From Vitrella brassicaformis CCMP3155 (taxonomy: Eukaryota > Protista > Chromerida), in contig CDMY01000280.1 of NCBI GenBank assembly GCA_001179505.1, forward strand, positions 72,682 through 136,681: a stretch of DNA of 64,000 bases. Direction: 5' to 3'. Positions 24,562-64,000 of this stretch are shown here, piece by piece; position 1 is the first letter of the stretch; every line of letters begins with the position of its first letter. A model generated the notes under the pieces. It was not told where the DNA came from. It did not search any database and was given only the letters and a program-made list of their open reading frames with translations. The translations under genes were made by a program, and so were the position numbers.

Positions 24562-26794
24562 TTATACCTGTCCATCAGCTGTTTCGGCATGCTCTGCCTT
24601 GGCGAGGGTCTTCAATTCGGCTTCCAAAGCCTTTTCTTCATCCTCTAGCTCATCTATGATTCTCTTTCGTCGCTGCAGAAAGACACGGGTATCACACGCA
24701 TAATTTCCCATCTCGACTTGGAACATTTAAATCTTCTCTTACTGAATCTGTAGAAAAAACGTCTGTCTGAGAAATTAGTTTGTCATACTGACGATCCAAG
24801 GCATTGGACCGCATTCCAAGGGCGGCGTAGCGTGGCTGATTGGTGTGTCCGCCGTATTTGTAGTAGTCGTCCGAATGCTGAGCCCCATTGGCTTTGAGGA
24901 GGGCAGCGACATCCTTCAGCTCCGGCTGCATCACCTGCACACACATGGCACGCAGTCAGGCCATGGCATCTCTTCATGCTTATCCCTCCGCTCACCACTT
25001 CGTCTAAAGGCGCCACGATTAGACCGCCCGGCCGACGCTTGCCAAGGTTGGGGTCTGCTCCGGCTTCCAACAGCAGCTCCACAGTGTCGAATATCCGAGC
25101 GGCTCGCGCGCCATCAGCATCCCACGCCAAGGGGCTGCCGGTCGCTGTCTCGGCCATCACTGCGCGATGAAGCGGCTCGCCGCACGCCATGTTTGGATCT
25201 GCGCCATTATCAAGAAGCGTCTTCACAGCCATCAAAGCATCTGCTGCCCCTTCTTGATAACGGACGAGAAAGAAATCGTACATGTGCTGCCTCATGCTTT
25301 TCCACCCCGTGTCTCCCTTTCGAATTTGATCGATTCGATCGATGAGCTCGGCGTGTTGGAGTCCCGTGAACTCTGTAATCAGCTGACAACTGATGACTGC
25401 CACCGTCAGAATGATGTTGGCAATGGGAAGCAGCTGCAGCTGGTAAGTGGGATAGCAGAGGAAGAGGACATTGCATATCAGGCCGAGAAGGTCTTCGCAG
25501 AGTATGCTGCAAAGACGATTGCCCCTGGCATTACGATGGCTTCTGGCGTCAACTTTGGCCTCAAGCATGGTAATCAGAGAAGGATAAAGCATAAAGGTCC
25601 CTACCAGGGGGGACAAAAAGTAGAGGCGCCAAGGCCATGTGGGGACTCTCTCGCTGAAGACCGCAATCGAAAAGAATGTAATCCAATCGGTGATGGCATC
25701 GACAAGCTCCGAAATCAGCACATGCAAAAGACCCAATCGGCTGTAATCGGGAAGAATAACATCCGGAAGAAGCTCTCTCGGAATCATGCAGTGGGTCACG
25801 ATGCCAATAGAAATTTCAATCACAATGCCGATGAAGAACAGCAAAACAGCCCCCCACCAGAGAAACTCCCCGATCCAGATGAAGATCCACCAAGCAGGAA
25901 ATGCACCTACCAACCCGCCCAGCGTCCCGACGCCACACAGAAAGGGGGCCCCCAGATGCAGATAAGGAATTGTGGGGGTATGCTTTTTCAGTGAGGCTGT
26001 TATGTTCTGCGCCAGCTGCTTCTGCACGTGCTCTTGCGAGGCTTCGAAGCCCATGGCTTCGTAGGCTGAGGCGATGGCATTCAGCAGATTCAAAAACAGA
26101 TTGCAGATGAGTGTGCCGATAGCACCGGCTCCTGGGTTGGCGCAAAGAATGATCACGACGTTGATGAAGTCGATGCTGTCGTTCAGGACAGAGATGCCGC
26201 TCAGCACCGTGATCACCCTGACGAGCCACCGAGGAGGGTCGGGCCGGTGGAAGCGAGCGATGATGGGTGCCGTGGGAGACGGCCCTCGCGGGGTCGCTGC
26301 CTGAGAGTCCACGCCCGAGTCAATGAGACAGGAGCGTTCGCCTAATTCGATGTCGCCCGATTGTCCCTTCTTGCGCTGCACCTGAGCGACCGCAAGGCAC
26401 AGGTCGTCAGCAAATTGCTCACACAATGATGTCTCCCCTGCGTACCCGTGTGGCATTCATTTGGACGTACTCCAGGCACCATTTGAGGACGAGCAGAGCC
26501 GTCGAGACAGCGGCAGAGGCGAGAAGGAGTCGCTTGCACAGGAGGGGAATGGTGTATTGGGACGGCTCGTTGATGATCATCTCCCAGAAGGAGAACCAGT
26601 CGGTCACTGCACATTGCAATGGGGGCAGAGAGAGAGCAAGATGCGTTATGATGGCGCGAGAGATGGTAAGAGGCCTGCTGTTGCTTACGGGCTGCAAAGG
26701 CGCCCAGAAGGATGAGCATCATGTTCTCTCGGAGGAACACTTGCAGTGATAGTCTGGGCCCTTGGGCCGGGCCCTGGCTGGATGAAGCATCAGC
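24562..26794 (-). CDS. Module M2: multi-TM + ankyrin repeats + terminal coiled coil
   Basis: Large exon in ORF 24783-26456. LLDNGADPNMACGEPLHRAV, VELLLEAGADPN, VAALLKANGA. Confidence 0.75.
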
Positions 26795-28959
26795 TGTATC
26801 GGCACGCACTGCCTTTAGAGCTTTCTCGCTATTCTCTCGTCGCACTTCAATCAAAATTCTTGTCGCCACGTGTGCATCGCAAATCAGTGCCTTGGATCGC
26901 ATCAAAAGGGCGGCGTAGCGTGGCTGATTGGTATGTCCGCCGTATTTATAGTAGTCGTCCGAATGCCGAGCCCCATTGGCTTTGAGGAGGGCGGCGACAT
27001 GATTCAGCTCAGGCTGTATTACCTGCACACACATGACACGCAGTCAGGCCGTGTGTGTGAATCTATGTGGCATCCATCTCTTCATGCTTATCACCCCGCT
27101 CACCACTTCGTCTAAAGGCGTCACGACTTGGCCGCCGGCCAGCTGCCGTGTGCCAAGATTGGGGTCTGCCCCGGCCTCCAGCAGCAGCTCCACAGTGTTG
27201 AAAATCCGAGCGGCTCGCGCGCCATCAGCATCCCACGCCAAGGGGCTATCGCCGGTCGCTGTCTCGGCCATCACTGCGCGATGAAGCGGCTCTCCGTTTG
27301 CCATGTTTGGATCTGCGCCACTGTCGACGAGCTCTTTCATGGCCAATAAAGGAGCGTCTCCGTTTCGAATCTGGTCGATTCGATCGATGAGCTCGGCGTG
27401 CTGGATGCCGATGTGTGTTCTAATCAGCTGACAACTGACGACCGCCACCGTCAAAATGATGTTGGCTATGGGGAGCAGCTGCAGCTGGTAAGTGGGATAG
27501 CAGAGGAACAGGACATTGCATACCAGGCCGAGAAGGCCTTTGCAGAGTATGCTAGAGAGACGATTGCGTCTTGCATCACGATGGCTTCTGGCGTCAACCT
27601 TGGCCTCGAGTATTGCGATCAGAGACGGGCAAAGGATTGGCCCTCTGGCGTCAATTTTCTGCTCGAGTGTTGCAATTAGAGAAGGGTAAAGGATGAGGGT
27701 TTCTGTGGCGGGGCAGAGAAAGTAGAGGTGCCAGAGCCATGTTGGGACTCTCTCGTTGAATACCGCAATCGTGAAGAAGGTAATCCAGGTGCTGGTTGTA
27801 TAGACAAGCTCCGCGATCAGCAAATGTAAAAGACCCAATCGGCAGTAGTCGAAGAGAAGAACATCCGAAAGAAGCTCCCTCGGAATGAGGCAGTGCGTCA
27901 CGATACCCATAAAGAGTCCATAAATTAATTTCGTCAGCATCAGAAAGATGGCAAACCACCAAAAAAGGCGCCCAATCCAGGTCATCCACCAAAGCCACCA
28001 AGAATTAGCAAGAAGGGCGCCGATCAACCCAAAAGGCGCAAAAAGCACGCCGGTCACCCCACAAGGCATAATAAAGACCGCCGGTACAGCGGTAGCCAAC
28101 ATCCGAACGATATCGAACAGAACGAGCTCGTCCAACCCTTTGCTTGTGATTTGCGCTAGCTGTTGCATGCGCATTCGCGAGGCTTCGAAGCCCATTGCCT
28201 TGTAGGCTGAGGCGATGGCATTCAGCAGATTCAAGGAGAGATTGCTGATGAGTATCCCCATCGCGTGGCTTCGGGGGTTGCCGATGGCGCAAAGAATGAT
28301 CACGACGTTGATGAAGTCGATGCTGTCGTTGAGGACGGAGATGCCGTTCAGCACCGTGATCATCCTGACGAGCCACCGAGGAGGGTCGGGCCGCTCGAAG
28401 CAAGTGATGATGGGTGCCGTAAGGGATGGCCCCTGCGGGGTCGCTGCCTGAGAGTTCACGCCTGAGTCGATGAGACGGGAGCGTTCGCCTAATTCGATGT
28501 CGCCCGATTGTCCCTTCTTGCGCTGCACCTGAGCGACCGCAAGGCACCAAAGACGTCAGCAAATTGCTCACACAATGATGTCCCCACTGCCTACCAGTGT
28601 GGCATTCATTTGGACGTACTCCAGGCACCATTTGAGGACGAGCAGAGCCGTCGAGACAGCGGCAGAGGCGAGAAGGAGTCGCTTGCACAGAGCCGGAATG
28701 GTGTATTGCGACGGCTCGTCGATGATCATCTCCCAGAAGGAGAACCAGTCGGTCACTGCACATGTGCATTGGGGGCAGAGAGAGAGCAAGATGCGTTATG
28801 ATGGCGCGAGAGATAGCAAGGGGCCTGCTGTTGCTTACGTGCCGCGAAGGCGCCCAGAAGGATGAGCATGATATTCTGTCGGAGGAACACTTGCAGTGAT
28901 AATCGTCTGGGACCTTGGCTGGTCGAAGCCTGCGACACGGAGGGTTGTCCGCCGGCCAT
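24562..28959 (-). CDS. Two-module concatemeric multi-TM/ankyrin-repeat protein (minus-strand array)
   Basis: ATG at 28959 (MAGGQPSVSQAST...). Exon structure matches the plus-strand modules. ORF 26342-27034 reads from module 1's ankyrin exon directly into module 2's first exon. The last exon ends RRKRIIDELEDEEKALEAELKTLAKAEHAETADGQV* (TAA 24564-24562). Confidence 0.75.
26795..28959 (-). CDS. Module M1: multi-TM + ankyrin repeats + linker
   Basis: Large exon in ORF 27044-28528. Ankyrin motifs LVDSGADPNMANGEPLHRAV and VELLLEAGADPNLG. Confidence 0.75.
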
Positions 28960-48087: not shown

Positions 48088-49441
48088 GCGATGGACTGGT
48101 CGGCCGAGATCACGCGTGCGTGCAGCCAGCCGTGCCAGCCTGCTGTATCGCCGCCACACTGTTCGTGCAGCTAGCTTGTTCAGGTGTGTGTCTCGTGCGA
48201 GCGACTGAGCCCAGATTTTTGAAGGTCTGTGCATTGCATGCGATTCGTGTCAATCGGGTGGAATGCAGTGGTGCGGTCACATATCTGACCGTCGGGTATG
48301 CAGCAATGGCTCGGCTGCACTCCTTTGTGTGTGTGTGTGTGTGTGTGTGTGACGAAGGGCAACGTGAGGTTTCAAGAGTGAACTGCCATCTTTCTGAATC
48401 CCAGACCGAATATGCCCTTTGAGTGCCGAATACAAGCATCACCGTCTCAGTAGCCTAGTCAACTCATGTCACTGCACCCCACTGGACTGCACTCCACTGG
48501 ACTGATGCAGGGAGGAAAGAGATCGTGGAAAGAGATTATGGAGGCAGAGACAGGGTGTTTCAGGGTTGTTCGCCGCCCCGCCTCCCGGCCGTCCGCTGCT
48601 GGCCGCCGCCCGCCTTGCGCTTCTTTCCTTCTTCTGCTGCTGTTGGTTGTTGCTGAGGCTGTGGGGCGGGGGGCTGGGCACCAGCAGCCGCGATGGCTGC
48701 ACTACACGCAGAAGTTGATTGATTCTACGACCTTCCAGGGGCCCACCTATCTACACGTACAGATAGGTTCTTCTGTACAGCCATCCATCTATCTGTACGT
48801 GTCTCACATCTCACATCCGTCTTTCAAGAAACTGAGTTACTCTCCCCGACTGAACCCACCCCCTCCCCCTCCCCGACTCCTATTGGCGACTCGGCGCTTC
48901 TTGCGCACCTCCCCGCCCTGCTGTGCCCCTCCGGCCGTCCAGGGCTGCTGCACGCCACGTCCTGCTGTTGTATGCTGTTGCTGGTTGTTCTTCTGCTGGC
49001 TGTTCTACTGTTGGTTGTTGCGCTGTGGAGGTCGTAAGAAAGGCAGACATTGGGCAGACAGAGACACGATGTACATCGAGTGATCGAGTTCGGTGACATC
49101 GTGCAGCATCAAAGTAGCCCGGGGCCCGCTGCTGGTAATTTGCACACACACACACACCCCACTGTGGAAGGCGACTGGCATACGTGCGCCTTTCTACCGG
49201 AAACACAAATGACCCAGCGATCACCCTACCAGCGATGGGAGCGCTGCCAGCGAGGGGAGGCAATACTTGGACAGTGGCTGGACATATGGACATGAGAGTG
49301 TGGTCATTTGAAAGCCCTTGCTCTTGCGGTCATTTTGGCCCATTTCCTCTCCCTTCCCCGCAGATCCGCGAGCTCAGCCTTTTTGAGGACCGTGGCAGCA
49401 CGGCGCAAACCAATAGGCAAAAACCACTGTAGAAGAGGAGA

Positions 49442-51563
49442 ATGGCTGGCGGACAGTCCTCCGTGTCGCAGGCTTCGTCCAGCCAAGGTCCCAGACGACT
49501 ACCACTGCAAGTGTTCCTCCGAGAAAACATGATGCTCATCCTTCTGGGCGCCTTCGCAGCACGTAAGCAACAGCAGGCCTCTTACCATCTCTCACGTCAT
49601 CATTATGTATCTTGCTCTCTCTCTGCCCCATTGCTTATGTGCAGTGACTGACTGGTTCTCCTGGTGGGAGATGAACATCGACGAGCCGTCCCAATATACC
49701 GTTCCCCTCCTGTGCAAGCGACTCCTTCTCGCATCTGCCTCTGTCTCTACGGCTCTGCTCGTCCTCAAATGGTGCCTGGAGTACGTCCAAATGAATGCCA
49801 CACTGGTACGCAAAGGAGACGTCTTCACGTGAGCAGTTCGCTGACGACTTGTGCATTGCGGTTGCTCAGGTGCAGCGCAAAAAGGGACAATCGGGCGACA
49901 TCGAGTTGAGTGGACGCTCCCGTCTCATCGACTCGGGCGTGGACTCTCAGGCAGCGACCCCGCAAGGGCCGTCTCCCACGGCACCCATCATCGCTCGCTT
50001 CCACCGGCCCGACCCTCCTCGGTGGCTCATCAGGGTGATCACGGTGCTGAGCGGCATCTCTGTCCTCAACGACAGCATCGACTTCATCAACGTCGTGATC
50101 ATTCTTTGCGCCATCGGCAACCCCCGAAGCCACGCGATGGGAATACTCATCAGCAATCTCTCCTTGAATCTGCTGAACGCCATCGCCTCAGCCTACAAGG
50201 CAATGGGCTTCGAAGCCTCGCGAGAGCGCATGCAACAGCTAGCCATAGCGCAAAGACTAGAAGCTCCCGTCGTCCTCTTTGCGGCCTTGGGTGTGATCGG
50301 TGCTCTTTGCGCTTATTGGGGGTGGATCACTTGGTGGATAAGTTGGATTGGGGGGTTCTTATGGTGGCTTGCCTTGGCTTTGATGCTGGTGATATCAATG
50401 TGTGAGACGATCGCAACCTGCTCGAGAGAGTTTCTTTCAGATGTTCTTCTCTCCGACTACATCCGATTGGCACTCTTGCACGTGCTGATCGCGGAGCTTG
50501 TCTATACAACGAGCACCTGGATTACATTCTTCACGATTGCGATCTTCAGCGAGAGAGTCCCGACATGGCTTTGGCACCTCTACTTTCTCATCCCCGCTAC
50601 AGAAACCCTCATCCTTTACCAATCTCTAATCGCAACACTCGAGCAGAAAATTGACGCCAGAGCCCACGGCCATTCGACCAACGCACTCCGTCTTTGCACC
50701 ATGATACTGGATGGCCTTGTGGGCCTGATATGCAATGCCCTCTTCCTCTGCTATCCCACTTACCAGCTGCAGCTGCTCCCAATAGCCAACATCATTCTGA
50801 CGGTGGCAGTCGTCAGTTGTCAGCTGATTGCAGACTTAACGAGACTTCATCACGCCGAGCTCATCGACCGCATCGATCAGATCCGAAAGGGAGACACTGT
50901 GTTAGTGGACATAAAAGGGCTTCTCGACGGTGGAGCAGATCCAAACATGGCATGCGGCGAGCCACTCTATCGAGCAGTGGCGGTCGAGACACAGACCGAC
51001 AGCGACCGGCCCTTGGTGAGGGATGCTGTCGCTGCGGCCGCTCGGATATTCAAGAGTGTGGAGCTGCTGTTGGAAGCCGGGGCAGATCCCAATCTTGGCA
51101 CACGTCGCCTGGCCGGTGGCCTAGTCGTGGCGCCTTTAGACGAAGTGGTGAGTGGGGGGATAAGCATGAAGAGATGAATGCCATCGAGACTAACACACAT
51201 GGCCTGACTGAGTGCCATGTTTGTGCAGGTAATACAGGCGGAGCTGAAGGATGTCGCCATCCTCCTCAAAGCCAATGGGGCTCGGCATTCGAAACACTTC
51301 TATAAATACGGCGGACACACAAATCAGCCACGCTACGCCGCCATTTTGATGCGATCCAATGCCTTGGATCGCAAGTTAAATGCTTGGCGACATGAACGTG
51401 CATGTGTGCAAGAGATTCAGATGATTGAAGCCGGTTCAATGTAACATGGGTCTGATGTCCGTGTCTGCAGCAGGAAGGAGAGCCTGAAAAAAAGCTACTG
51501 GATGAAGAGAAAGCTTTGGAAGCCAATTTGAAGACCATCGCTCGCGCTGTGCGCGCAGAGACA
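49442..51563 (+). CDS. Module A: multi-TM + ankyrin repeats (carries the ATG)
   Basis: Exons 49442-49562, 49645-49805, 49870-51147 and 51229 onward. LLDGGADPNMACGEPLYRAV, VELLLEAGADPN. Confidence 0.8.
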
Positions 51564-53598
51564 GCCGATGGACAAGCTTTCGTGCCGCAGGCTTTGTCCA
51601 GTGACGGGCCTAGAAGGGTGTCATGGCAAGTCCTCCTCCGAGAAAACATAATGCTCATCCTTCTGGGCGCCTTCGCGGCACGTAAGCAACAGCAGGCCTC
51701 TTACCATCTCTCACGCCATCATGATGCATCCCTCTCTCTGTCCCCATTGCAATGTGCAGTGACCGACTGGTTCTCCTTCTGGGAGATGATCATCGACGAG
51801 CCGTCCCAATACACCATTCCCCTTCTGTGCAAGCGGCTCCTTCTCGCATCTGCCTCTGTCTCTACTGCTCTGCTCGTCCTCAAATGGTGCCTGGAGTACG
51901 TCCAAATGAATGCCACACTGGTACGCAGAGGAGACGTCTTCAGGTGAGCACTTTGCTGACGACTTGTGCATTGCGGTTGCTCAGGTGCAGCGCAAAAAGG
52001 GACAATCGGGCGACATCGAATTAGGCGAACGCTCCCGTCTCATCGACTCGGGCGTCGACTCTCAGGCAGCGACCCCGCGAGGGCCGTCTGCCACGGCACC
52101 CATCATCGCTCGCTTCCACCGGCCCGACCCGCCTCGATGGCTGGTCAGGATGATCACGGTGCTGAGCGGCATCTCTGTCCTCAACGACATCATCGACTTC
52201 ATCAACGTCGTGATCATTCTTTGCGCCATCGGCAACCCCCGAAGCCACGCGATGGGAATACTCATCAGCAATCTCTCCTTGAATCTGCTGAATGCCATCG
52301 CCTCAGTCTATAAGGCCATGCGCTTCGAAGCCTCGCGAGAGCGCATGCAACAGCTAGCCATAGCGCGAAGACCAGAGGATCCGGGAGTATTGGGAGCTGC
52401 CGTCGTCCTCTTTGCGGTCTTGGGGGTGATCGGTGCTCTTTGTGCTTATTGGGGGTGGAGCACTTGGTGGATAAGTTGGATTGGGGGTTTCTTATGGTGG
52501 CTTGCCATCGCTGTGATGCTGATGATATCAATGTGTGGGACGATCGCAACCTGCTCGAGAGAGCCTCCTTCAGGGGCTCGCCTCTTCGATTACAGCCGAT
52601 TGGGTCTTCTGCATGTGCTGATCGCGGAGCTTGTCTACACAACCAGCACCTGGATTACCTTCTTGACGATTGCGATGTTCAACAAGAGAGTCCCCATATG
52701 GCTGTGGCGCCTCTACTGTCTCATCCCCGCTACAGAAACCCTCATCCTTTACCCCTCTCTAATCGCAACACTCGAGCAGAAAATTGACGCCAGAGCCCAT
52801 CGCCATCCGACCAAAGATGGTTGCAGCATACTCTGCGAAGCCCTTTTCGGCCTCACATGCAATGTCCTCTTCCTCTGCTATCCCACTTATCAACTGCAGC
52901 TGCTCCCAATAGCCAACATCATTCTGACGGTGGCAGTTTTCAGTTGCCAGCTGAGTAGAAGGCCCATCGGCCTTCAACATGCCGAGCTCATCGACCGCAT
53001 CCATCAAATTCGAAAGGAAGATGCTGCGTGGATAAGCATGGCCATGAAACAGCTTCTTGACGGTGGCGCAGATCCAAACATGGCGTGCGGCGAGCCGCTT
53101 CATCAGGCAGTGATGGCCGAGACAGAGACCGACGACAGCGACAGCCCCTTGGTGCGGGATACTGAAGGAGCTCCTATTCGGATTTTCAACACTGTGGAGC
53201 TGCTGTTGGAGGCCGGAGCAGACCCCAATCTTGGCAAGCGTCGGTTCGGCGGCCTAGTCGTGGCGCCTTTAGACGAAGTTGTGAGCGGAGGGTTAAGCAC
53301 TAAGCGACGGACACCTTCGAGACTAACACAAATGGCCTGACTTGGTGCCATGTTTGTGCAGGTGATACAGCCTGAGCTGAAGGATGTCGCTGTCCTCCTC
53401 AAAGCCAATGGGGCTCGGCATTCGGACGACTACTATAAATACGGCGGACACATCAATCAAGCCCGCTACGCTGCCCTTTTGATGCGGTCCAATGCCTTGG
53501 ATTGCGAAGAATACCGTGGGATATGTATTCCTTGGCGTCGAGAGAAAGACTTGGAAGCCGACTTAAAGACCCTCGCTGAGGCAGTGTGTGCCGAAACG
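51564..53598 (+). CDS. Module B: multi-TM + ankyrin repeats
   Basis: Large exon in ORF 51910-53340. ORF 53350-53976 continues without stop into module C exon 1. Confidence 0.8.
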
Positions 53599-55132
53599 GC
53601 TGAGGGACGGGTCTTCGTGCCGCAGGGTTCGTCCAACCAAGGGTCCAGAAGGTTACTGCAAGTGTTCCTCCGAGAAAACACGATGCTCATCCTTCTGGGC
53701 GCTTTCGCAGCACGTAAGCGAAGCAGGCCTCAAGATGTTTATTACGCCATCATGGTGTATCTCTTTTCGCCCCCATTGCAATGTGCAGTGACCGACTGGT
53801 TCTCCTTCTGGGAGATGATTATCGATGAGCCGTCCCAATACACCATTCCCCTCCTGTGCAAGCGGCTCCTTCTCGCATCTGCCTCTGTCTCTACTGCTCT
53901 GCTCGTCCTCAAATGGTGCCTGGAGTACGTCCAAATGAATGCCACACTGGTACGCAGGGGAGACGTCTTCAGGTGAGCACTTTGCTGACGACTTGTGCAT
54001 TGCGGTTGCTCAGGTGCAGCGCAAAAAGGGACAATCGGGCGACATCGAATTAGGCGAACGCTCCCGTCTCATCGACTCGGGCGTCGACTCTCAGGCAGCG
54101 ACCCCGCGAGGGCCGTCTCCCACGGCGCCCATCATCACTCGCTTCGACCGGCCCCACCCTCCTCGGTGGCTCATCAGGGTGATCACGGTGCTGAGCGGCA
54201 TCTCTGTCCTCAACGACAGCATCGACTTCATCAACGTCGTGATCATTCTTTGCGCCATCGGCAACCCCCGAAGCCACGCGATGGGAATACTCATCAGCAA
54301 TCTCTCCTTGAATCTGCTGAACGCCATCGCCTCAGCCTACAAGGCAATGGGATTCGAAGCCTCGCGAGAGCGCATGCAACAGCTGGCCCAAATCATACCC
54401 GGAGTTTCATGTCAGTCCGACCTGATGTCGTCTATGGGGATTCTTCGATTTCTGCCAACTATGGGGATCTCTATTTGTCCCTTTGGGGTGATCGGCGCTC
54501 TTCTTGCTGATTCGTGGTGGCTTTGGTGGATTGGGAGTTTTTTCTGGTGGCTTGCCTTGGCTTTGATGCTGGTGACGCTAATGTGCGGGCTCGTTCTTGG
54601 CGTTGTGACGCATTGTTTGGTCCCGATGGGGCTCCTTTCGGATGTTCTTCTCTTCGACTACATCCATCTCGGTCTCTTACACGTGCTGATTCCGGAGCTC
54701 GTGTACACGACCAGCACGTGGATTACCTTCTTTACGACTGCCGTCTTCAGCGAGAGAGTCCCGACATGGCTCTGGCATCTCTACTTTCTCTGCCCCGCCA
54801 CAGCAACCCTCATCCTTTACCCTTCTCTAATCCTAACACTCGAAGAGAAGATTGACGCCAGGACCCATCGCGACACGGCCAAAGCACTCCGTCTCTGCAC
54901 CATGGGACTTGAAGGCCTTCTCGGCTTGATATGCAATGCCCTCTTCCTCTGCTATCCCACTTACCAGCTGCAGCTGCTCCCAATAGCCAACATCATTCTG
55001 ACGGTGGCGGTCGTCAGTTGTCAGCTGATTCAGATTTTTGTGCAAAATCAGAAAGCAGAGCTGGAGGATGAAGAGAAAGCTGCACTCGAAGCCGACTTAA
55101 AGACCCTCGCTGAGGCAGTACCTGCCGAATCA
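53599..55132 (+). CDS. Module C: multi-TM only (ankyrin region absent)
   Basis: ORF 53939-55333 goes ...VAVVSCQLIQIFVQNQKAELEDEEKAALEADLKTLAEA directly into module D exon 1. Confidence 0.8.
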
Positions 55133-57570
55133 GCTGATGGACAAGTTTTCGAATCGCAGGGTTCGTCCAGCCAAGGGTCCAGAAGGGTACTGCAAGTGTT
55201 CCTCCGAGAAAACACGATGCTCATCCTTCTGGGCGCCTTCGCAGCACGTAAGCAACAGCAGGCCTCTTACCATCTCTCACGCCATCATCGTGTATCTTGC
55301 TCTCTCTCTGCCCCCATTGCACATGTGCAGTGACCGACTGGTTCTCCTTCTGGGAGATGAACATCGACGAGCCTTCCCAATACACCATTCCCCTCTTGTG
55401 CAAGAGACTCTTTCTCGCCTCTGCCTCTGTCTCTACGGGTCTGCTCGTCCTCAAATGGTGCCTGGAGTACGTCCAAATGAATGCCACACTGGTACGCAGG
55501 GGAGACGTCTTCAGGTGAGCACTTTGCTGACGACTTGTGCATTGCGGTTGCTCAGGTGCAGCGCAAGAAGCCACCCTCGGGCGACATCGAATTAGGCGGA
55601 CGCTCCCGTCTCATCGACTCGCATGTGGACTCTCAGGCAGCGACCCCGCGAGGGCCGTCTCCCACGGCACCCATCATCACTCGCTTCCACCGGCCCCCCC
55701 CTCCTCGATGGCTGGTCAGGATGATCACGGTGCTGAGCGGCATCTCTGTCCTCAACGACATCATCGACTCCATCAACGTCGTGATCATTCTTTGCGCCAT
55801 CGGCAACCCCCGAAACCACGCGATGGGAATCCTCATCAGCAATCTCTCCTTGAATCTGCTGAATGCTATCGCCTCAGCCTACAAGGCAATGGGCTTCGAA
55901 GCCTCGCGAGAGCGCATACAGCAACTCACCCGAATTGTAAGCGGACTCCCGAGGGGAAACCCACTGGTTGACTGCACAGGCTCCTTAGTGCGTGAAAAGC
56001 TTCCGGGGCTGTTCGATGTCCGTCGGGCATTGCCTTGCTGGGGAAGCAGTATTTGTGTCTTTGGGGTGATCGGCATGCTTTGTGCCCCTTCTGGGGCTAT
56101 CCATGCCTCGTGGTGGTTTTGGTGGATAGCTTGGATCGGGCACCATTTCTGGTGGCTTGCCATGCGCCTTTTCTGGGGGCTTGCCATCATGCAGATGCTG
56201 TCGACGCTGATGGGTGGACTCGTCGTGACGCATTGCTTGATCCCAAAGGAGCTTCTTTCAGATGTTCTCCTCTCCGACTACCACCGATTGGGTCTTTTAC
56301 ATGTGCTGACGGCGGAACTTGTCTACACGACCAGCACGTGGATTACCTTCTTCACCACTGCCGTCTTCGGCGAGAGAGTCCCGACATGGCTCTGGCATCT
56401 CTACTTTCTCTGCCCCGCCACAGCAACCCTCATCCTTTACCCTTCTCTAATCCTAACACTCGAGGAGAAAATTGACGCCAGGACCCATCGCGACGCGGCC
56501 AAAGCACTCCGTCTCTGCACCATGGGACTTGAAGGCCTTCTCGGCTTGATATGCAATGTCCTCTTCCTCTGCTATCCCACTTACCAGCTGCAGCTGCTCC
56601 CAATAGCCAACATCATTCTGACGGTGGCGGTCATCAGTTGTCAGCTGATTACAGAAATCACGGGACTCCACCACGCCGAGCTCATCGACCGCATCGATCA
56701 AATTCGAAAGGGAGACACCGGGTGGAAAAGCATGGGAGAGAGTATAGCTCTCTATTTCTATCCCGAGTGGGGGTATCGGAAAGCTGATGCTTTGGCGGCG
56801 GTGAAGATGGTTCTTGATGGTGGCGCAGATCCAAATATGGCGTGCGGCGAGCCTCTTTATCGCGCAGTGATGGCCGAGACAGCGACCGACGGCAGCGACA
56901 GCCCCTTGGTGAGGGATGCCGAAGCCGTAGCTACACGGATATTCAACACTGTGGAGCTGCTGTTGGAAGCCGGAGCAGACCCCAACCTTGGCACACGGCA
57001 GCTGGCCGGCGGCTTAATCGTAGCGCCTCTGGATGAAGTGGTGAGTGGGGGGATAAGGATGAAGAGATGAATGCCACACAGATTCACCCACATGGCCTGA
57101 CTGAGTGCCATGTTTGTGCAGGTAATACAGCCTGAGCTGAAAGATGTCGCTGTCTTCCTCAAAGCCAATGGGGCTCGACATTCGGACGACTACTATAAAT
57201 ACGGCGGACACACCAATCAGGCCCGCTACGCTGCCCTTTTGATGCGATCGAAAGAGCTGATCGGCAAATTTGATGCTTGGCGACAAGATTTCGTACGACA
57301 AAGAAGATTTGGATGATTGAAGTCAATATGATGAATAGGTATGATGCCTTTGTCTTTCTGCAGCGAAAATATTAGGAACCAGAGCGACTAAAAGAAATGG
57401 AAAAAGAGTATAAGGAAACGGAAGACAAAAATGCTGCGATTCCTTCTTTTAAAGAACGAGAGGAGAAAGAAGAAAAGGAGCATCAGGCGAAGCTGAAAAA
57501 GTTAGAAGACGAAGAAAATGAACTAGAAACCGAGTTGAAGACCCTCGCTGAGGCAGTGCGTGCCCAACCA
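55133..57570 (+). CDS. Module D: multi-TM + ankyrin repeats + long coiled-coil linker exon
   Basis: Large exon in ORF 55481-57070, ankyrin exon from 57122, E/K-rich linker exon from about 57376. Confidence 0.8.
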
Positions 57571-59897
57571 GCCGATGGACGGGTCTTTGCATCCCAGGCT
57601 TCATCCAGCGAAGGGCGTAAACGAGTCTCACTGCAGGTGTTCCTCCAAGAGAACGTCATGCTCATCCTCCTGGGCGCCTTCGCAGTACGTAAGCAACAGC
57701 AGGCCTCTTACCGTCTCTCACGCCATCATCGTGTATCTTGCTCTCTCTCTGCCCCCATTGCACATGTGCAGTGACCGACTGGTTCTCCTTCTGGGAGATG
57801 AACATTGACGAGCCTTCCCAATACACCATTCCCCTCCTGTGCAAGCGGCTCCTTCTCGCCTCTGCCTCTGTCTCTACGGCCCTGCTCGTCCTCAAATGGT
57901 GTTTGGAGTACGCCCAAATGAATGCCACACTGGTACGCAGGGGAGACGTCTTCAGGTGAGCACTTTGCTGACGACTTGTGCATTGCGGTCGCTCAGGTAC
58001 AGCGCAAAAAGGGACCCTTGGGCGACATCGAATCAAACGACTGCTCCCGTCTCATCAAGTCGGGCGTGGACTCCCCGCAAGGGACGTCTGCCACGGTGCC
58101 CATCATCACTCGCTTCGACCGGCCCCCCCCTCCTCGGTGGCTCGTCAGGATGATAACGGTGCTGAGCGGCATCTCTGTCCTCAACGACAGCATCGATTTC
58201 ATCAACGTCATGATCATTCTTTGCGCCAACCCAGGAGCCAGTGCTATTGGCACACTCATCTGCAATCTGTTCCTGAACTCGCTGAATGTCATCGCCTCAG
58301 CCTATGAAGCCATGGGCTTTGAAGCATCCCAAGAGAAGATGCAAGAACAGCTGGCGCAAAACCTGACAGCCGCACTGAAAAAGCATGCACGGCTGGAGGA
58401 TTCACCCGATACCTTACTGCAATCGTCCAATCGACGCTGGCTATCTGGGCGGGCGCACATAGCGGCCCCCATTGCGTGTTTCTGTGGGGCGATGGGTGCG
58501 TTGCTAGGTGCAATCCCTGCTTCGTGGATCTGGGCAATCGTCATTTGGTTTGGGGGAGTCTTCTGGTATGGTGCTGTTCTGCTGTTCTTCATCGGCATTG
58601 CGATTGAAATCTTTATTGGCGTCGAGACGCACTGCCTCATTCCGAGGGAGCTTCTTAAAGTTTCAGAAGTCAATCTCTCTGACTACATCCGATTGGGTCT
58701 TTTGCACGTGCTGATTCCGGAGCTTGTCGATGCAATCACTGATTGGATTACCTTCTTTTCAACTGCCGTCTTCAGCGAGAGAGTCCCGACATGGCTTTGG
58801 CGCCTCTACTTTCTCTCCCCTCTGATAGGGACCTTCATGCTCTATCCTTCTCTTCTCACCATGCTCGAGGCCAAAGTTGATGCCCGAAGCCATCGTGAGG
58901 CGAGACGCAATCGTCTGTGCAGTATACTCTGCGAAGACCTTTTGGGCCTGGTATGCAATGTCCTCTTTCTCTGTTATCCCACTTACCAGCTGCAGCTGCT
59001 CCCAATTGCCAACATCATTTTGACGGTGGCGGTCGTCAGTTGTCAGCTGATTACAGAGTTCACGGGACTCCAACATGCCAAGCTCATCGACTATATCGAT
59101 CAAATTCGACAGGGAGACACCGGGCGGAAAAGCATGGGAGAGCGTATAGCTAATTTTTGCTATCCCCAGTGGGGGTATCAGAAGAGAGATGCTTTCATGG
59201 CTGTAAAGACGCTTCTTGACGGTGGCGCAGATCCAAACATGGCATGCGGCGAGCCCCTTCATCGCGCAGTGATGGCCAAGACAGAGACCGACAGCGACAG
59301 CCCCTTGGTGTGGGATGCTGAAAGAGTAGCTACTCGAATATTCAACACTGTGGAGCTGCTGTTGGAAGCCGGAGCACGCCTCAATCTTGGCACACGGCAA
59401 CTGGCCGGCGGCCTAGTCGTGGCGCCTTTAGACGAAGTGGTGAGTGGGCTGATACGCATAAGAGATGGACACCATCGAGACTCACACACATGGCCTGACT
59501 GAGTGCCATGTTTGTGCAGGTGATACAGCCCGAGCTGCAGCATGTTGCCGCCCTCCTCAAAGCCAATGGGGCTCGGCATTCGGACGACTACTACAAATAT
59601 GGCGGGCACACCAATCAGCCACGCTACGCCGCCCTTTTGACGCAATCCACTGCCTTGGATCGTCAATATGACAAGATACGAGACGAAATGGATTTGCTTG
59701 AGACGATGATTAAGGAGCAAGACAAAAGACGAGAGAAACACGATGAGGACGAAAAGTCTCGCGCCGGTCTTTCTGAGAAAGAACGGGAGGACCAAGAAAA
59801 AAAGGCACATCAGGCGAAGCTGGAACAGTTGCGAGACCAACATCATAAACTACAAATGGATTTATGGACCTCCGCTGAGGCAGTACGTGCAGAACCA
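57571..59897 (+). CDS. Module E: multi-TM + ankyrin repeats + coiled coil
   Basis: Large exon in ORF 57922-59502. ORF 59508-60125 reads through a coiled coil into module F exon 1. Confidence 0.8.
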
Positions 59898-62100
59898 GCT
59901 GATGGACGGGTCTTTGCATCCCAGGCCTCATCCAGCCAAGGTCCCAGACGACTACCACTGCAAGTGTTCCTCCGAGAGAACGTCATGCTTATCCTTCTGG
60001 GCGCCTTTGCAGCACGTAAGCAACAGCATGCATCTTACCATCTTCACGCCATCATTATGTTTCTCTCTGCTCCCGATGCAATGTGCAGTGACCGACTGGT
60101 TCTCCTTCTGGGAGATGAGTATTGACGTGCCCTCTCAATACACCGTCCCCTTCCTGTCCAAGCGACTTCTTCTCGCATCTGCCTCTGTCTCTACGGCTCT
60201 GCTCGTCCTCAAATGGTGCCTGGAGTACGTCCAAATGAATGCCACACTGGTACGCAAAGAAGACGTCTTCACGTGAGCAGTTCGCTGACGACTTGTGCAT
60301 TGCGGTTGCTCAGGTGCAGCGCAAAAAGGGACAATCGGGTGACATCGAGTTGAGTGGACGCTCCCGTCTCATCGACTCGGGCGTGGACTCTCAGGCAGCG
60401 ACCCCGCGAGGGCCGTCTCCCACGGCACCCATCATCACTCGCTTCCACCGGCCCCCCCCTCCTCGATGGCTGGTCAGGATGATCACGGTGCTGAGCGGCA
60501 TCTCTGTCCTCAATGATATCATCGACTTCATCAACGTCGTGATCATTCTTCATGCCATCGGCAACCTCCGAAGCCACGCGATAGGAATACTCATTAGCAA
60601 TCTCTCCTTGAATCTGCTGAATGCCATCGCCTCAGCCTACAAGGCAATGGGATTCGAAGCCTCCCAGCTGGCCCAAATCATACCCGAGGATCCGGAACAG
60701 ACCGTCAGGCTCTTTGCGGTCATTGGGCTTTGTGCTCCTTCTGGGGTGGTCGGTGCTCTTTGTGCTTATTGGGGGTGGAGTTGGATTGGGGGCTTCTTTC
60801 GGTGGTCTTCCATCATGCTGATGCTGTTTCTCCTTTCCATGCTCATGCTGGCTTGCTTGCTCGGCTGCGCAACCTGCTTGATAGAGGTGATGCCAGGGGC
60901 TCACCTCTTCCACTACCACCGATTGGGTCTTCTGCATGTGCTGATCGCAGAGCTTGTCTCCACGACCACCGCGTGGATTACTTTCTTTACGATTGCGGTG
61001 GTCAACAAGGGAGTCCCCACATGGCTTTGGCGCCTCTACTTTCTCTGGCCCGTCACAGAGACCTGGCTCCTTTACCCTTCTCTTCTCACCATGCTTGAGG
61101 CCAAAGTTGATGCCAGAGCCCAACTGATGTTCGGATGGGCTCGTCTCTCCAGCATACTCTGCGAAGACCTTCTCGGCCTGATATGCAATGTCCTTTTCCT
61201 CTGCTATCCCACTTACCAGCTGCAGCTGCTTCCACTTGCCAACATCATTTTGACGGTGGCAGTCATCGGTTGTCATCTGACTAGAGAGCTTACGGCACTT
61301 CAACACATCGAACTCATCGACCGCATCGATCAAATTCGGAAGGGATACATCAAATGGAAAAGCATGAGGCAGCGGATGTACGACTTTTTCGGTGTCCGTT
61401 ACCAAGAAGGGACAGCTGATGCTCTGGTGGCTGTCAAGAGGCTTCTCGACGGTGGCGCAGATCCAAACACGGCAAACGGAGAGCCTCTTTATCGCGCAGT
61501 GATGGCCGAGACAGAGACCGACAGCAGCGACCGCTGGGTGTGGGATGCTAAAGGCAGAGTAGCTACTCGAATATACAACACTGTGGAGCTGCTGTTGGAG
61601 GCCGGGGGAGACCCCAATCTTCGCAACCTTTTCGACGAAGTGTTCACCGGGGGGATAAGCGCAAAGAGACGGATGCCACACAGGTTCACACACATGGCCT
61701 GACTGGGTGCCATGTTTGTGCAGGTAAAACAGCCGGAGCTGCAGCATGTTGCCGCCCTCCTCAAAGCCAATGGGGCTCGACATTCGGACGACTACTATAA
61801 ATACGGCGGCCACACCTCTCAGCCACGCTACGCTGCCCCTTCGACGCGGCCCAAGGGTTGGTGACAAGAATTCGTACGACAAAGAAGATTTAAAATGATT
61901 GCAGTCGAGATGAGAAAGATGAGTGTGATGCCTATGTTTTTCTGCAGCCTGATCAAGAGCGAAATCAGGAGCCAGAGCGACGCGAGGAAATCAGGAAAGA
62001 GCTAGAGGATGGAGAGCAAGTTTTGGAAGCGAATTTCAAGACCCTCACCGAGGCAGTTAGTGCACAAGCAGCCGGCGGTGAGGTATTGATAAGCTGGTGA
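59898..62100 (+). CDS. Module F: terminal multi-TM + ankyrin module with degenerate 3' end
   Basis: Large exon in ORF 60239-61702. The usual gtgagt donor is replaced by GAAGTGttcacc; in-frame TGA at 61862-61864; orphan terminal exon about 61951-62100 ending AAGGEVLISW*. Confidence 0.7.
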
Positions 62101-62326: not shown

Positions 62327-64000
62327 TCACGGGGAGGAGGGATTAATCCCAGCCCCATCAGCACACCCCAGTCCCGCAAACCCTCCCCTCCCTCCCCCAC
62401 GCAGACGATAGCTAGTCGCACGCGCGAGGGCGATAGACAAGCGAAAGCGAATCCATCCAGACACATGACTGAACCCCCGATCCTTCCACCCCTCCTTCTC
62501 CAACAGCGCATGAGCCATGTGGGCGATGAACACATTAACATCGTGTCCCCACACACCGTCNNNNNNNNNNNNNNNNNNNNNNNNNNNNNNNNNNNNNNNN
62601 NNNNNNNNNNNNNNNNNNNNNNNNNNNNNNNNNNNNNNNNNNNNNNNNNNNNNNNNNNNNNNNNNNNNNNNNNNNNNNNNNNNNNNNNNNNNNNNNNNNN
62701 NNNNNNNNNNNNNNNNNNNNNNNNNNNNNNNNNNNNNNNNNNNNNNNNNNNNNNNNNNNNNNNNNNNNNNNNNNNNNNNNNNNNNNNNNNNNNNNNNNNN
62801 NNNNNNNNNNNNNNNNNNNNNNNNNNNNNNNNNNNNNNNNNNNNNNNNNNNNNNNNNNNNCATCTCCCGACGCACACCAGCGTCCCCCCACGCCATCCCA
62901 ATCAGCTCGGCAAAAGTGTCCCGCAGCTCGTTATGGCGACGAATCACCAGGCCGTACCGCTTGCAGCACAGCGCATGGTCGACGGTGAGGGGCTGGTTGC
63001 AGTGCTCGCAGCGTGCAGCGAGGCCAGGGGGGTGACGGCCGTATCGCATGTTGAGGGCATCTCGAAACTCCGCAGCATCAAGACCAGTGTTGTTGTCTGT
63101 CGATGGGAGGGTGGTCAGCCAGCCGGACGTCTTGTATTCGGCACTGCGGGAGAGGACGCGATGGCGCCGGCGGTCGATGTGTGGTAAGGCGGCCTCCCTC
63201 TTGGTCTTGTGGGCGACGTCCTGCTGCTGCTTGCTCCGGGTGAGGGCGTGGCGGATGGTGGCACGATGGTCGCCAGGGTGGAAGGGAGCCTTGCCTTGGA
63301 CGGCCTTGTAGACCACCTTGGTGCTCGCGCGGGAAGCGGGGTAGGCGGCGGCGGCACGGTCGAGAGGGTCACGTATGCCGGTGCCGCCAAAGCGGGCAGG
63401 CAGCAGCATCGAGTCGACCTCGGATGGCGTCACAGGGCCGCCGAAGAAAGCCGGCAGCAGCTCGTTGGCGATGGCCTCGCGGAGGGGGCTGAGAGTGCAC
63501 TCGTCGGTGAGCACGACACGAAAGACGTAGTCCCACTTCATCAGCAGAGACCTCGTCATTGCCGCGTGGGCCGTGTGCGGGAAGTTGCGGGCAGCAGACG
63601 CAAGCGCGCGCACGCCGTGCACCCACCCCTCGACCTTCTGGCCGAGGAACGCCGCCCTCCCCCCCTCATCGCCCACGTAGCCGCCCAGAAACCTCTTGCC
63701 CGTGACGATCTGCACCCTTTCGGGCTCGAAGAGCTCCCTTGCGATCTGCTCGAGCTTGGGTTTGACGACGAGGAAGGACTTGGCGGTCTCTGGGTGATAG
63801 GCGTATGAGGGACCGATGCGATGCAGGGCTCGAAACCACACGAGTATGCCGTGAAGTTTGCCGAGCGCCGATGAGTCATCTGCATACCAGCACTGCCGCA
63901 GCGAAGCGCCAGATGAAGAGGCCGACGAGGCCGACGAACTCTCTCTGTCCTCCTCACCAACTCCAACACCTTCTACATCAGAACACACACATACACCCGC
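62327..64000 (-). mobile_element. Non-LTR retrotransposon ORF (reverse transcriptase C-terminal part, CCHC-like knuckle, probable restriction-like endonuclease); interrupted by gap and window edge
   Basis: QCWYADDSS (RT YADD), GPSYAYHPETAKS, GKRFLGGYVG, LLPARFGGTGI, SGWLTTLP...FRDALNMRYG, CEHCNQPLTVDHALCCKRYG...RHNELRD, then RFRLSIALARAT after the gap. This is typical of RLE-type (CRE/R2-related) LINEs. Confidence 0.88.
62561..62860. other. Assembly gap (300 N) within the retroelement
   Basis: 300 N. Continuity of the ORF across it is unverified. Confidence 0.95.

What the first reader, a model, noticed from the sequence alone, without database searches (positions are those of the whole stretch)
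49442..62100. Tandem modules fused in frame into a giant multi-pass membrane/ankyrin concatemer
Seen: six head-to-tail units, each spliced as exon1 (VFLRENxMLILLGAFAA) - exon2 (LTDWFSFWEM..LEYVQMNATL) - a large TM/ankyrin exon - an ankyrin exon - a coiled-coil linker. Only unit A has a start context. Three junctions are open reading frames with no stop or intron: B to C (ORF 53350-53976), C to D (53939-55333) and E to F (59508-60125). Inference: the array is one gene, or a few, encoding up to roughly 3,500 aa with about 10 hydrophobic helices per module, i.e. a beads-on-a-string membrane protein grown by whole-gene concatenation. A gene predictor would split it into separate hypothetical genes. 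I do not recognise this architecture from any described family.
Basis: partly seen in the sequence, partly recalled or inferred. Interest (0 to 1): 0.85.

Follow-up and report, generated by a model that had tools for sequence, protein, structure and literature searches.

The report
In-frame concatemer of membrane-protein gene copies
In the alga Vitrella brassicaformis, six nearly complete copies of a species-specific membrane-protein gene are joined head to tail behind one start, but three small lesions at copy boundaries cut the reading frame, and no RNA data show what protein is made.

Summary
The three junction ORFs exist as stated. The genome is Vitrella brassicaformis CCMP3155, contig CDMY01000280.1.

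The fusion is already in the public annotation as three uncharacterised proteins:
- CEL99445.1: module A, 529 aa.
- CEL99446.1: modules B-C-D, 1470 aa.
- CEL99447.1: modules E-F, 1339 aa.

Only canonical GT-AG sites are needed to build one 3,669-aa ORF. It requires a shifted donor at A-B and use of a TAG as acceptor at D-E. With the homologous sites the frame breaks at three places, all within 12 nt of a retained intron-4 splice site: a 2-nt deficit in A, CAG>TAG in D-E, and CGA>TGA in F. Module bodies are intact, with dN/dS 0.2-0.6.

An intact two-module paralogue (1,296 aa) with the same head and tail lies on the minus strand of this window. A transcriptome ORF spans a junction in another paralogue.

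I found no RNA evidence for this array. The runs I laid were genomic DNA.

The membrane domain (about 10 helices) has no Pfam or PDB relative, and the ankyrin match is sub-threshold.

Verdict: this is a real concatemer-type gene family. Multi-module products are likely. The six-module giant protein is unproven.

The parts
49385..49441 (+). Conserved 5' flank of the array head (likely 5' UTR or promoter-proximal). It is found only before the first module.
   Evidence: 57 nt are about 86% identical to the flank of the minus-strand array head. There is no significant similarity to any linker (z<3). The metagenome contig L002 is also colinear from 49387.
49442..51405 (+). Module A. Exons 49442-49562, 49645-49805, 49870-51147, and 51229-51397 (homologous donor) or 51229-51405 (in-frame donor GTGCAA). 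Start ATG at 49442.
   Evidence: P0002 (CEL99445.1) matches the first 500 residues exactly.
51398..51470 (+). A-B junction intron 4. The homologous donor at 51398 is out of frame by a 2-nt deficit and leads to stop TGA 51483-85. Unspliced, the stop is TAA 51441-43. The alternative donor at 51406 restores the frame.
   Evidence: The DNA contig 51262-51680 is identical in four runs.
51471..53713 (+). Module B (exons 51471-51681, 51760-51920, 51985-53280). Exon 4 from 53362 runs without stop or intron into exon 1 of C. Intron 4 is deleted in frame.
   Evidence: ORF 53350-53976. The chain translation has no stop. P0021 is identical over 799 residues.
53789..55247 (+). Module C (exons 53789-53949 and 54014-55247). 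The ankyrin-like part, intron 3 and exon 4 are deleted in frame, so the last helix runs straight into the linker and exon 1 of D.
   Evidence: ORF 53939-55333. Alignments.
55331..57292 (+). Module D (exons 55331-55491, 55556-57040, 57122-57292).
57293..57375 (+). D-E junction intron 4. The homologous acceptor puts the exon start at 57364 and gives RKY followed by TAG (57373-75), where the F tail has CAG. Using that TAG as the acceptor (exon start 57376) keeps the frame. The annotated start of the E-F gene is ATG 57397, only 21 nt after the annotated stop.
57376..60015 (+). Module E (exons 57376-57688, 57772-57932, 57997-59439). Exon 4 from 59520 runs into exon 1 of F. The intron-4 donor has changed GT>AT and the former intron is read in frame as a long charged helical linker.
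   Evidence: P0009 (CEL99447.1) matches exactly. ORF 59508-60125. Alignment. The linker is modelled as two long helices with pLDDT 75-94.
60089..61864 (+). Module F (exons 60089-60249, 60314-61639, 61724-61864). The intron-3 donor is shifted 3 nt (GAA|GTGTTC). A premature TGA at 61862-64 lies where D has CGA.
61874..62100 (+). F intron 4 (61874-61947) and the array tail exon (61948-62100, stop TGA 62098-62100). The tail is homologous to the tail of the intact paralogue but is cut off from F by the TGA.
24562..28959 (-). Intact paralogue with the same head (MAGGQ..), two modules fused in frame, and the same tail (..ETADGQV stop). It encodes 1,296 aa using canonical homologous splice sites.

Best explanation
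What it is. The locus is one member of a Vitrella-specific gene family in which nearly the whole coding sequence has been multiplied head to tail in frame. The module is about 10 membrane helices, a short ankyrin-like region and a helical tail.

How it is built. An array has one head, n modules and one tail. The head is a conserved 5' flank plus ATG MAGGQ. The tail ends ..ETADGQ-stop.

How it arose (inferred). The joint between modules lies exactly where the tail's A-D-G-Q (GCTGATGGACAG) meets the head's A-G-G-Q (GCTGGCGGACAG). The concatemer most likely arose by recombination at this 12-nt microhomology. Unequal crossing-over between the homogenised 5' parts of modules probably then changed the module number (2 in the minus-strand copy, 6 here).

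How it would work (inferred). Each module has an even number of helices with both ends on the same, probably cytosolic, side. Modules can therefore be strung together without topological conflict. The product would be a covalently linked pseudo-oligomer whose subunits differ in a hypervariable central pair of helices.

State in the reference sequence. The six-module frame is interrupted at three module ends. The ORFs are A (581-591 aa), B-C-D and E-F, as in the public annotation. Multi-module polypeptides of two or three modules are the most likely products. Longer ones are made only if the alternative donor (51406) and acceptor (57376) are used.

Shown: the module structure, ORF continuity at three junctions, the lesions, purifying selection, the intact two-module paralogue, and a junction-spanning transcript in a paralogue. 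Inferred: a single transcription unit, topology, oligomer mimicry and the recombination mechanism.
For: - Six modules in register.
- Public models of 529, 1470 and 1339 aa lie on this stretch, with only 21 nt between the stop of the second and the ATG of the third. That leaves no room for a separate promoter.
- A 3,669-aa stop-free chain can be built with GT-AG sites only. P0009 matches it exactly, and P0002 and P0021 match over 500 and 799 residues.
- dN/dS is 0.22-0.64 for all module pairs in the three better-conserved regions and 0.27-0.80 in the hypervariable region.
- All three frame-breaking lesions lie within 12 nt of intron-4 splice sites. There are none in about 3,400 codons of module bodies.
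- Three junctions are in frame by three different routes: intron deleted, large deletion, and intron exonised after GT>AT.
- An intact two-module gene with the same head flank and tail lies at 28959-24562 on the minus strand.
- The MMETSP transcriptome ORF P0006 runs ankyrin-like part, linker, next module with all four introns removed, in a paralogue.
- A stand-alone single-module relative, P0005, has its own start and stop.
- About 10 helices per module.
Against: - There is no RNA evidence for this array. No RNA run holds the A-B stretch, and the only possible RNA run has 4% of its words. The four runs laid are genomic DNA. No transcript-derived ORF matches the head of E.
- B-C-D has no start codon before the first helix.
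- Translation of E-F from the same mRNA after a stop would be inefficient.
- The two frame-restoring sites could easily be there by chance (my estimate is about 0.6 and 1 in 3 or better).
- Module order is not confirmed by any bridging contig, and a 300-N gap lies 460 nt downstream.
- The structure models are of low confidence, so topology rests on hydropathy.
Confidence: 0.55

Rival explanations
1. One giant protein. The whole array is spliced into a single mRNA. It uses donor 51406 at A-B and acceptor 57376 at D-E and is translated from ATG 49442 to TGA 61864. The product would have 3,669 aa and about 58-60 membrane helices.
For: The chain with these sites has no stop, and all 19 introns are GT-AG of 64-83 nt. 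There is a single conserved head. B lacks its own start. Only 21 nt and 30 nt separate the ORFs. The B-F bodies are intact and constrained.
Against: Both sites differ from the homologous ones used in paralogues. Acceptor 57376 lacks the pyrimidine tract that precedes 57364. GTGCAA is a weak donor. Such sites are expected by chance. There is no RNA support.
Confidence: 0.15
2. Recently decaying array. Only module A is still made, as a single-module protein of 581-591 aa, or nothing is made. B-F would be a young untranslated remnant that has not yet accumulated further damage.
For: There are three frame-breaking lesions. No RNA holder was found. The intron-3 donor of F is altered. Module C has lost its ankyrin-like part. 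Another decayed tandem array was reported elsewhere in this genome (unchecked).
Against: About 9 kb of B-F coding sequence has no stop or frameshift. dN/dS is well below 1. The lesions are confined to about 8% of the length (the linkers), which has a chance probability of about 5e-4 if they fell at random. This is my estimate from the coordinates.
Confidence: 0.2
3. Polyprotein. The concatemer is translated and then cut at the conserved linker (..LKTLAEAVRAE-ADGRVF-SQ-SSSQG-RR..) into single modules, as in the light-harvesting polyproteins of dinoflagellates and euglenids.
For: Whole units are concatenated in frame with a well conserved linker motif. Precedent exists in a related algal lineage, where 80 loci encode multi-unit polyproteins that are cleaved into single units (PMC4351107).
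Against: No plastid-type presequence is evident at the head. The first hydrophobic stretch starts at residue 30 and is a conserved membrane helix. No known cleavage motif (SPLR) is present. Modules of about 10 helices would insert co-translationally.
Confidence: 0.08
4. Assembly artefact. Dispersed paralogues were wrongly chained into one array.
For: No contig of the DNA runs bridges two modules. There is a scaffold gap at 62561-62860.
Against: The unique junction segments 51262-51680 (A-B) and 55090-55245 (C-D) are each held in single contigs without differences. The variable segments have similar depths. The same architecture is seen in the minus-strand copy and in other contigs.
Confidence: 0.03

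Closest known systems
Public gene models CEL99445.1, CEL99446.1 and CEL99447.1 of Vitrella brassicaformis CCMP3155 (uncharacterised proteins)
   Same: They cover the same DNA. They already join B-C-D and E-F in frame and use the same introns 1-3.
   Different: They stop A inside intron 3 and start B at a methionine inside the first helix. They remove 393 nt of C and 258 nt of D as extra introns. They do not recognise the array as one head-to-tail unit. No function or family is attached to them.
Light-harvesting-complex polyprotein genes of dinoflagellates (Symbiodinium acpPC) and euglenids
   Same: Whole membrane-protein units are multiplied in frame within one gene. The number of units per locus varies. 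Units are shuffled by gene conversion (PMC4351107).
   Different: Those units have 3 helices, are plastid-targeted and are cleaved at known motifs. Here the unit has about 10 helices plus a soluble part, has no evident targeting leader, and cleavage is untested.
Pseudo-oligomeric channels made of concatenated homologous membrane domains (four-domain Nav/Cav, two-pore channels)
   Same: The idea is the same: subunits of an oligomer become covalently linked by tandem duplication and fusion, and the domains then diverge.
   Different: No sequence or fold relation was detected (no Ion_trans match). The fusion here is young and polymorphic in module number, and it includes the soluble tail of every unit.
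Single-module paralogue P0005 (615 aa, contig CDMY01000619.1)
   Same: It has the same module: a leader, about 10 helices, an ankyrin-like part and a helical tail (46-47% identity).
   Different: It is a stand-alone gene with its own ATG and stop, and no neighbouring copy within 8 kb. Its ends lack the AGGQ/ADGQ microhomology.

Membership tests
Ankyrin repeat (Pfam PF00023/PF12796/PF13637) | Score at or above the Pfam gathering threshold | tested here: not met
   The best score is 20.0 bits against a cut-off of 21.1. Other modules score 12.7-19 bits.
Ankyrin repeat (Pfam PF00023/PF12796/PF13637) | Sequence similarity to bona fide multi-ankyrin proteins | tested here: met
   phmmer matches residues 439-510 of the module-D ORF to proteins with 4-14 matched stretches, with E down to 1e-14. 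The precomputed Pfam Ank/Ank_4 hits are on paralogue P0022.
Ankyrin repeat (Pfam PF00023/PF12796/PF13637) | Helix-turn-helix repeat fold | tested here: inconclusive
   The AlphaFold2 model of this part has pLDDT below 50.
XK-related / Xkr scramblases (PF09815) | Profile match to the XK-related domain | tested here: not met
   The only support was a language-model lead (score 0.85, 149 features). It was not reproduced on the membrane part alone. There was no Pfam hit in 15 members at E up to 10 and no PDB sequence hit.
Polyprotein genes of the dinoflagellate LHC type | Complete protein units concatenated in one reading frame | tested here: met
   B-C, C-D and E-F are continuous, and the two-module paralogue is intact.
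Polyprotein genes of the dinoflagellate LHC type | N-terminal plastid-targeting presequence and a known cleavage motif between units | tested here: not met
   The SPLR motif named in PMC4351107 is absent from the linkers. The head sequence has no N-terminal hydrophobic signal before residue 30. No targeting predictor was available.
Polyprotein genes of the dinoflagellate LHC type | Proteolytic release of single units | not testable with these tools
   This needs protein data.
Voltage-gated-type or TRP-type channels (Ion_trans) | Pfam Ion_trans / Ion_trans_2 match in the membrane domain | tested here: not met
   There was no such hit. The only trace is a TM-score of 0.28 to an Ion_trans_2 cluster for a poor Atlas model.

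The most novel reading that the evidence does not exclude
The array is expressed as one mRNA. Regulated choice between neighbouring splice sites at A-B (51398 vs 51406) and D-E (57364 vs 57376) would then decide whether translation stops after 1, 4 or 6 modules. One locus would yield a graded series of covalent pseudo-oligomers of up to 3,669 aa and about 60 membrane helices.
Probability: 0.12. Interest if true: 0.75.

Novelty: new variant of a known kind. Interest (0 to 1): 0.45.

Why it matters
If multi-module proteins are made, this is a young and still variable example of a known evolutionary route. In that route, subunits of a membrane-protein oligomer become one polypeptide by whole-gene concatenation, as is inferred for four-domain ion channels. 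Here the intermediate states can all be compared within one genome:
- a stand-alone single-module gene;
- an intact two-module gene;
- a six-module array with three different junction repairs and three boundary lesions.

It also flags that the public gene models at this locus are inconsistent. The membrane domain is an uncharacterised, apparently Vitrella-restricted family.

Tried and rejected
1. RNA evidence. The look-up of sequencing runs returned no RNA holder. The call covered 51100-57099, so the TAG at 57373-75 and the TGA at 61862-64 were not re-checked in reads.

2. Transcript-derived proteins. Searches with the module-D ORF, the head of E and the whole E-F protein found only one transcriptome ORF. 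That ORF, P0006, comes from a paralogue (84-87% identity to P0022 and P0001).

3. My first idea of a 31-nt intron between exon 2 and exon 3 was wrong. B-E have no AG there, and the real intron is 64 nt.

4. Overlapping genes or frameshifting at the exon-2/exon-3 border. I rejected both for the same reason as in point 3.

5. Fold of the membrane domain. AlphaFold2 with a 15-sequence family alignment gave pLDDT 50 and pTM 0.29. That is too poor for a fold search, so none was run.

6. Family assignment. Pfam gave nothing on single ORFs or on all 15 members. The PDB profile search gave nothing. The Atlas XK-related lead was not reproduced.

7. Homology between A's 5' flank and the linkers. None was significant, so A is a true head and not a converted internal module.

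8. Metagenome contig L002. It carries only one truncated module and says nothing about junctions.

9. Spliced-leader trans-splicing as a way to express B-D and E-F separately.
Full report
**Identity of the sequence.** A protein search with the large ORF of module D returned only proteins of Vitrella brassicaformis CCMP3155, one MMETSP transcriptome ORF and one metagenome ORF. The exact look-up of P0009 places the stretch on contig CDMY01000280.1 (136,681 nt) of assembly GCA_001179505.1. The window is the last 64 kb of that contig.

**Observation.**
- Six direct copies are in register, spaced 2115, 2029, 1542, 2441 and 2317 nt.
- A multiple alignment of the units and motif positions give the same gene structure in every unit:
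  - Exon 1 ends in ..MLILLGAFAA.
  - A 73-83-nt intron follows.
  - Exon 2 runs LTDWFSFWEM..LEYVQMNATL.
  - A 64-nt intron follows.
  - Exon 3 runs VQRKKG.. through the membrane domain and the first ankyrin-like repeats to ..LDEVV.
  - A 79-83-nt intron follows.
  - Exon 4 starts IQPELKDVA.LLKANGARHSDDYYKYGGH...
  - A linker then leads into exon 1 of the next unit.
- The public protein P0002 and the transcriptome ORF P0006 both read NATL|VQRKK. This fixes intron 2 at 49806-49869 in A. The 'MPHWYA' start of each big ORF is intron sequence read in frame.

**What the public record already has.** The annotation calls three genes on the array:

| Window range | Accession | Length | Modules |
|---|---|---|---|
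| 49442-51177 | CEL99445.1 | 529 aa | A |
| 51651-57375 | CEL99446.1 | 1470 aa | B+C+D |
| 57397-61864 | CEL99447.1 | 1339 aa | E+F |

The in-frame fusion of modules is therefore already in the databases, unnamed and uncharacterised. The models are inconsistent with each other:
- A is ended by reading through the intron-3 donor.
- B starts at a methionine inside the first helix.
- Parts of the variable regions of C (54411-54803) and D (55937-56194) are removed as in-frame introns.
- The stop of the second gene and the ATG of the third are 21 nt apart.

**Can it be one ORF?**
- Using only GT-AG sites I assembled a chain from ATG 49442 to TGA 61864. It translates to 3,669 aa without a stop. It contains P0009 exactly and P0002 and P0021 over 500 and 799 residues.
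- Two of its sites are not the homologous ones.
- At A-B, the donor homologous to that of D and F (51398) is out of frame because A has 5 nt where D has 7. It gives ..AWRHEPGRRA-stop. An in-frame GTGCAA donor lies 8 nt downstream. Unspliced, the frame ends at TAA 51441.
- At D-E, the homologous acceptor gives RKY followed by TAG (57373-75). The tail of F has CAG at that codon, and the frame after the TAG is the conserved linker frame (EPER..). Using the TAG as acceptor keeps the ORF open.
- In F, a TGA (61862-64) stands where D has CGA, three codons before the intron-4 donor. It cuts off the 50-residue tail, which ends at 62100.
- All three breaks lie within 12 nt of the three retained copies of intron 4.
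- The three junctions without that intron are open: B-C has it deleted, C-D has a larger deletion, and E-F has the donor changed GT>AT with the intron read as coding.

**Are the modules coding?**
- Nei-Gojobori estimates on protein-guided codon alignments give dN/dS of 0.22-0.64 for every pair in the three better-conserved regions, and 0.27-0.80 in the hypervariable region.
- dS is 0.10-0.42 in the 5' part (0.10-0.24 among A-D and F, 0.31-0.42 for pairs with E), 0.13-0.60 in the 3' membrane part and the ankyrin-like part, and 0.13-2.3 in the central variable segment.
- Intron 2 is as conserved as exon 2 (94.7% against 93.0%). The 5' part is therefore most likely homogenised by gene conversion. 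This agrees with another first-stage note about hypervariable segments in near-identical modules.
- No stop or frameshift occurs in about 3,400 codons of module bodies.
- If three lesions fell at random, the chance that all would hit the linkers (about 8% of the length) is about 5e-4. This is my estimate.

**The family.**
- The exhaustive representative search found only 7-8 proteins that match the membrane part. Five of these were traced to Vitrella records. P0010 comes from a short JGI/IMG contig, and the metagenome contig L002 is 84-89% identical in DNA. All other hits match only residues 439-510, the ankyrin-like part.
- No Pfam family reaches threshold. No PDB sequence matches. The Atlas lead to XK-related proteins was not reproduced.
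- AlphaFold2 models were of low confidence, except for the E-F linker. That linker is predicted as two long helices with pLDDT 75-94.
- Hydropathy and the model's helices indicate about 10 membrane helices per module. A basic loop (VQRKK..RFHRP) follows helix 2. I infer that both ends are cytosolic.

**Paralogues that calibrate the reading.**
- On the minus strand of the same window (28959-24562) there is an intact gene of 1,296 aa. It has the same head (MAGGQPSVSQ.., with a conserved 5' flank), two modules joined in frame without intron 4, and a tail ending ..ETADGQV-stop. All its splice sites are canonical.
- Public proteins P0001, P0004, P0008 and P0022 from other places also cross junctions. 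The transcriptome ORF P0006 crosses one with introns 3, 4, 1 and 2 removed. P0006 is the only transcript-level evidence, and it concerns a paralogue.
- P0005 is a stand-alone single-module gene with its own start and stop.
- The head codes A-G-G-Q, the tail codes A-D-G-Q, and the internal joints read ..ETADGQ/R-.F... The fusion point coincides with a 12-nt microhomology. I infer recombination there as the origin.

**Expression.**
- No RNA run holds the A-B stretch. A possible RNA run has 4% of its sampled words.
- The four runs I laid are DNA: colinear contigs that include introns, with no joints.
- They confirm the local sequence, including the A-B lesion region (51262-51680, no differences in four runs from two studies). 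They do not confirm the order of modules.
- The D-E and F lesions were outside the laid stretch.

**Conclusion.**
- The step from 'in-frame array' to 'one giant protein' is not supported by the homologous splice sites or by any RNA.
- The best reading is a concatemer-type gene with one head and one tail whose frame is currently cut into 1+3+2 modules.
- My estimates: about 0.55 for the statement as a whole; about 0.15 for a single six-module product; about 0.2 for a recently decaying array.
- The nearest described analogues are the polyprotein genes of dinoflagellate light-harvesting proteins (PMC4351107) and, in principle, pseudo-oligomeric multi-domain channels. No homology to either was found.

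Noticed in passing
window 24562-28959 (minus strand): This is an intact two-module paralogue (1,296 aa) with the same head and tail as the six-module array. No public protein of this length turned up in the searches, so it seems to be annotated differently or not at all.
   Followed up: partly
window 54411-54803 and 55937-56194: The public model CEL99446.1 removes these in-frame stretches (393 and 258 nt) of the hypervariable membrane segments of C and D as introns. D's stretch has a perfect GTAAGC donor and CAG acceptor, yet the ORF is open through both. They could be optional introns that remove several helices.
   Followed up: partly
window 49806-49869 and its five copies: Intron 2 is as conserved between modules as the flanking exon 2 (94.7% against 93.0% mean identity). 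Introns 1 and 3 are at 82-83%. This points to gene conversion or to a functional element in intron 2.
   Followed up: partly
window 59655-59900 (E-F linker): A former intron 4 has been turned into coding sequence after loss of its GT donor. The resulting lysine- and glutamate-rich linker is the only part of the family that AlphaFold2 models with confidence, as two long helices.
   Followed up: partly
L002 (ENA ERZ893784 contig k147_970655), 10-1393: A metagenome contig carries an A-type head and a truncated module that is 84-89% identical in DNA to the window's units. A Vitrella-like organism is therefore present in that environmental sample.
   Followed up: no
window 62561-62860 (also 970-1269 and 6217-6516): These are 300-N scaffold gaps. 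One lies 460 nt downstream of the array tail, so the 3' context of the array is not continuous sequence.
   Followed up: no
window 60632-61882 (minus strand): A 416-aa antisense ORF lies over module F, and similar antisense ORFs lie over E. They are most likely a by-product of the codon composition of the sense strand.
   Followed up: no
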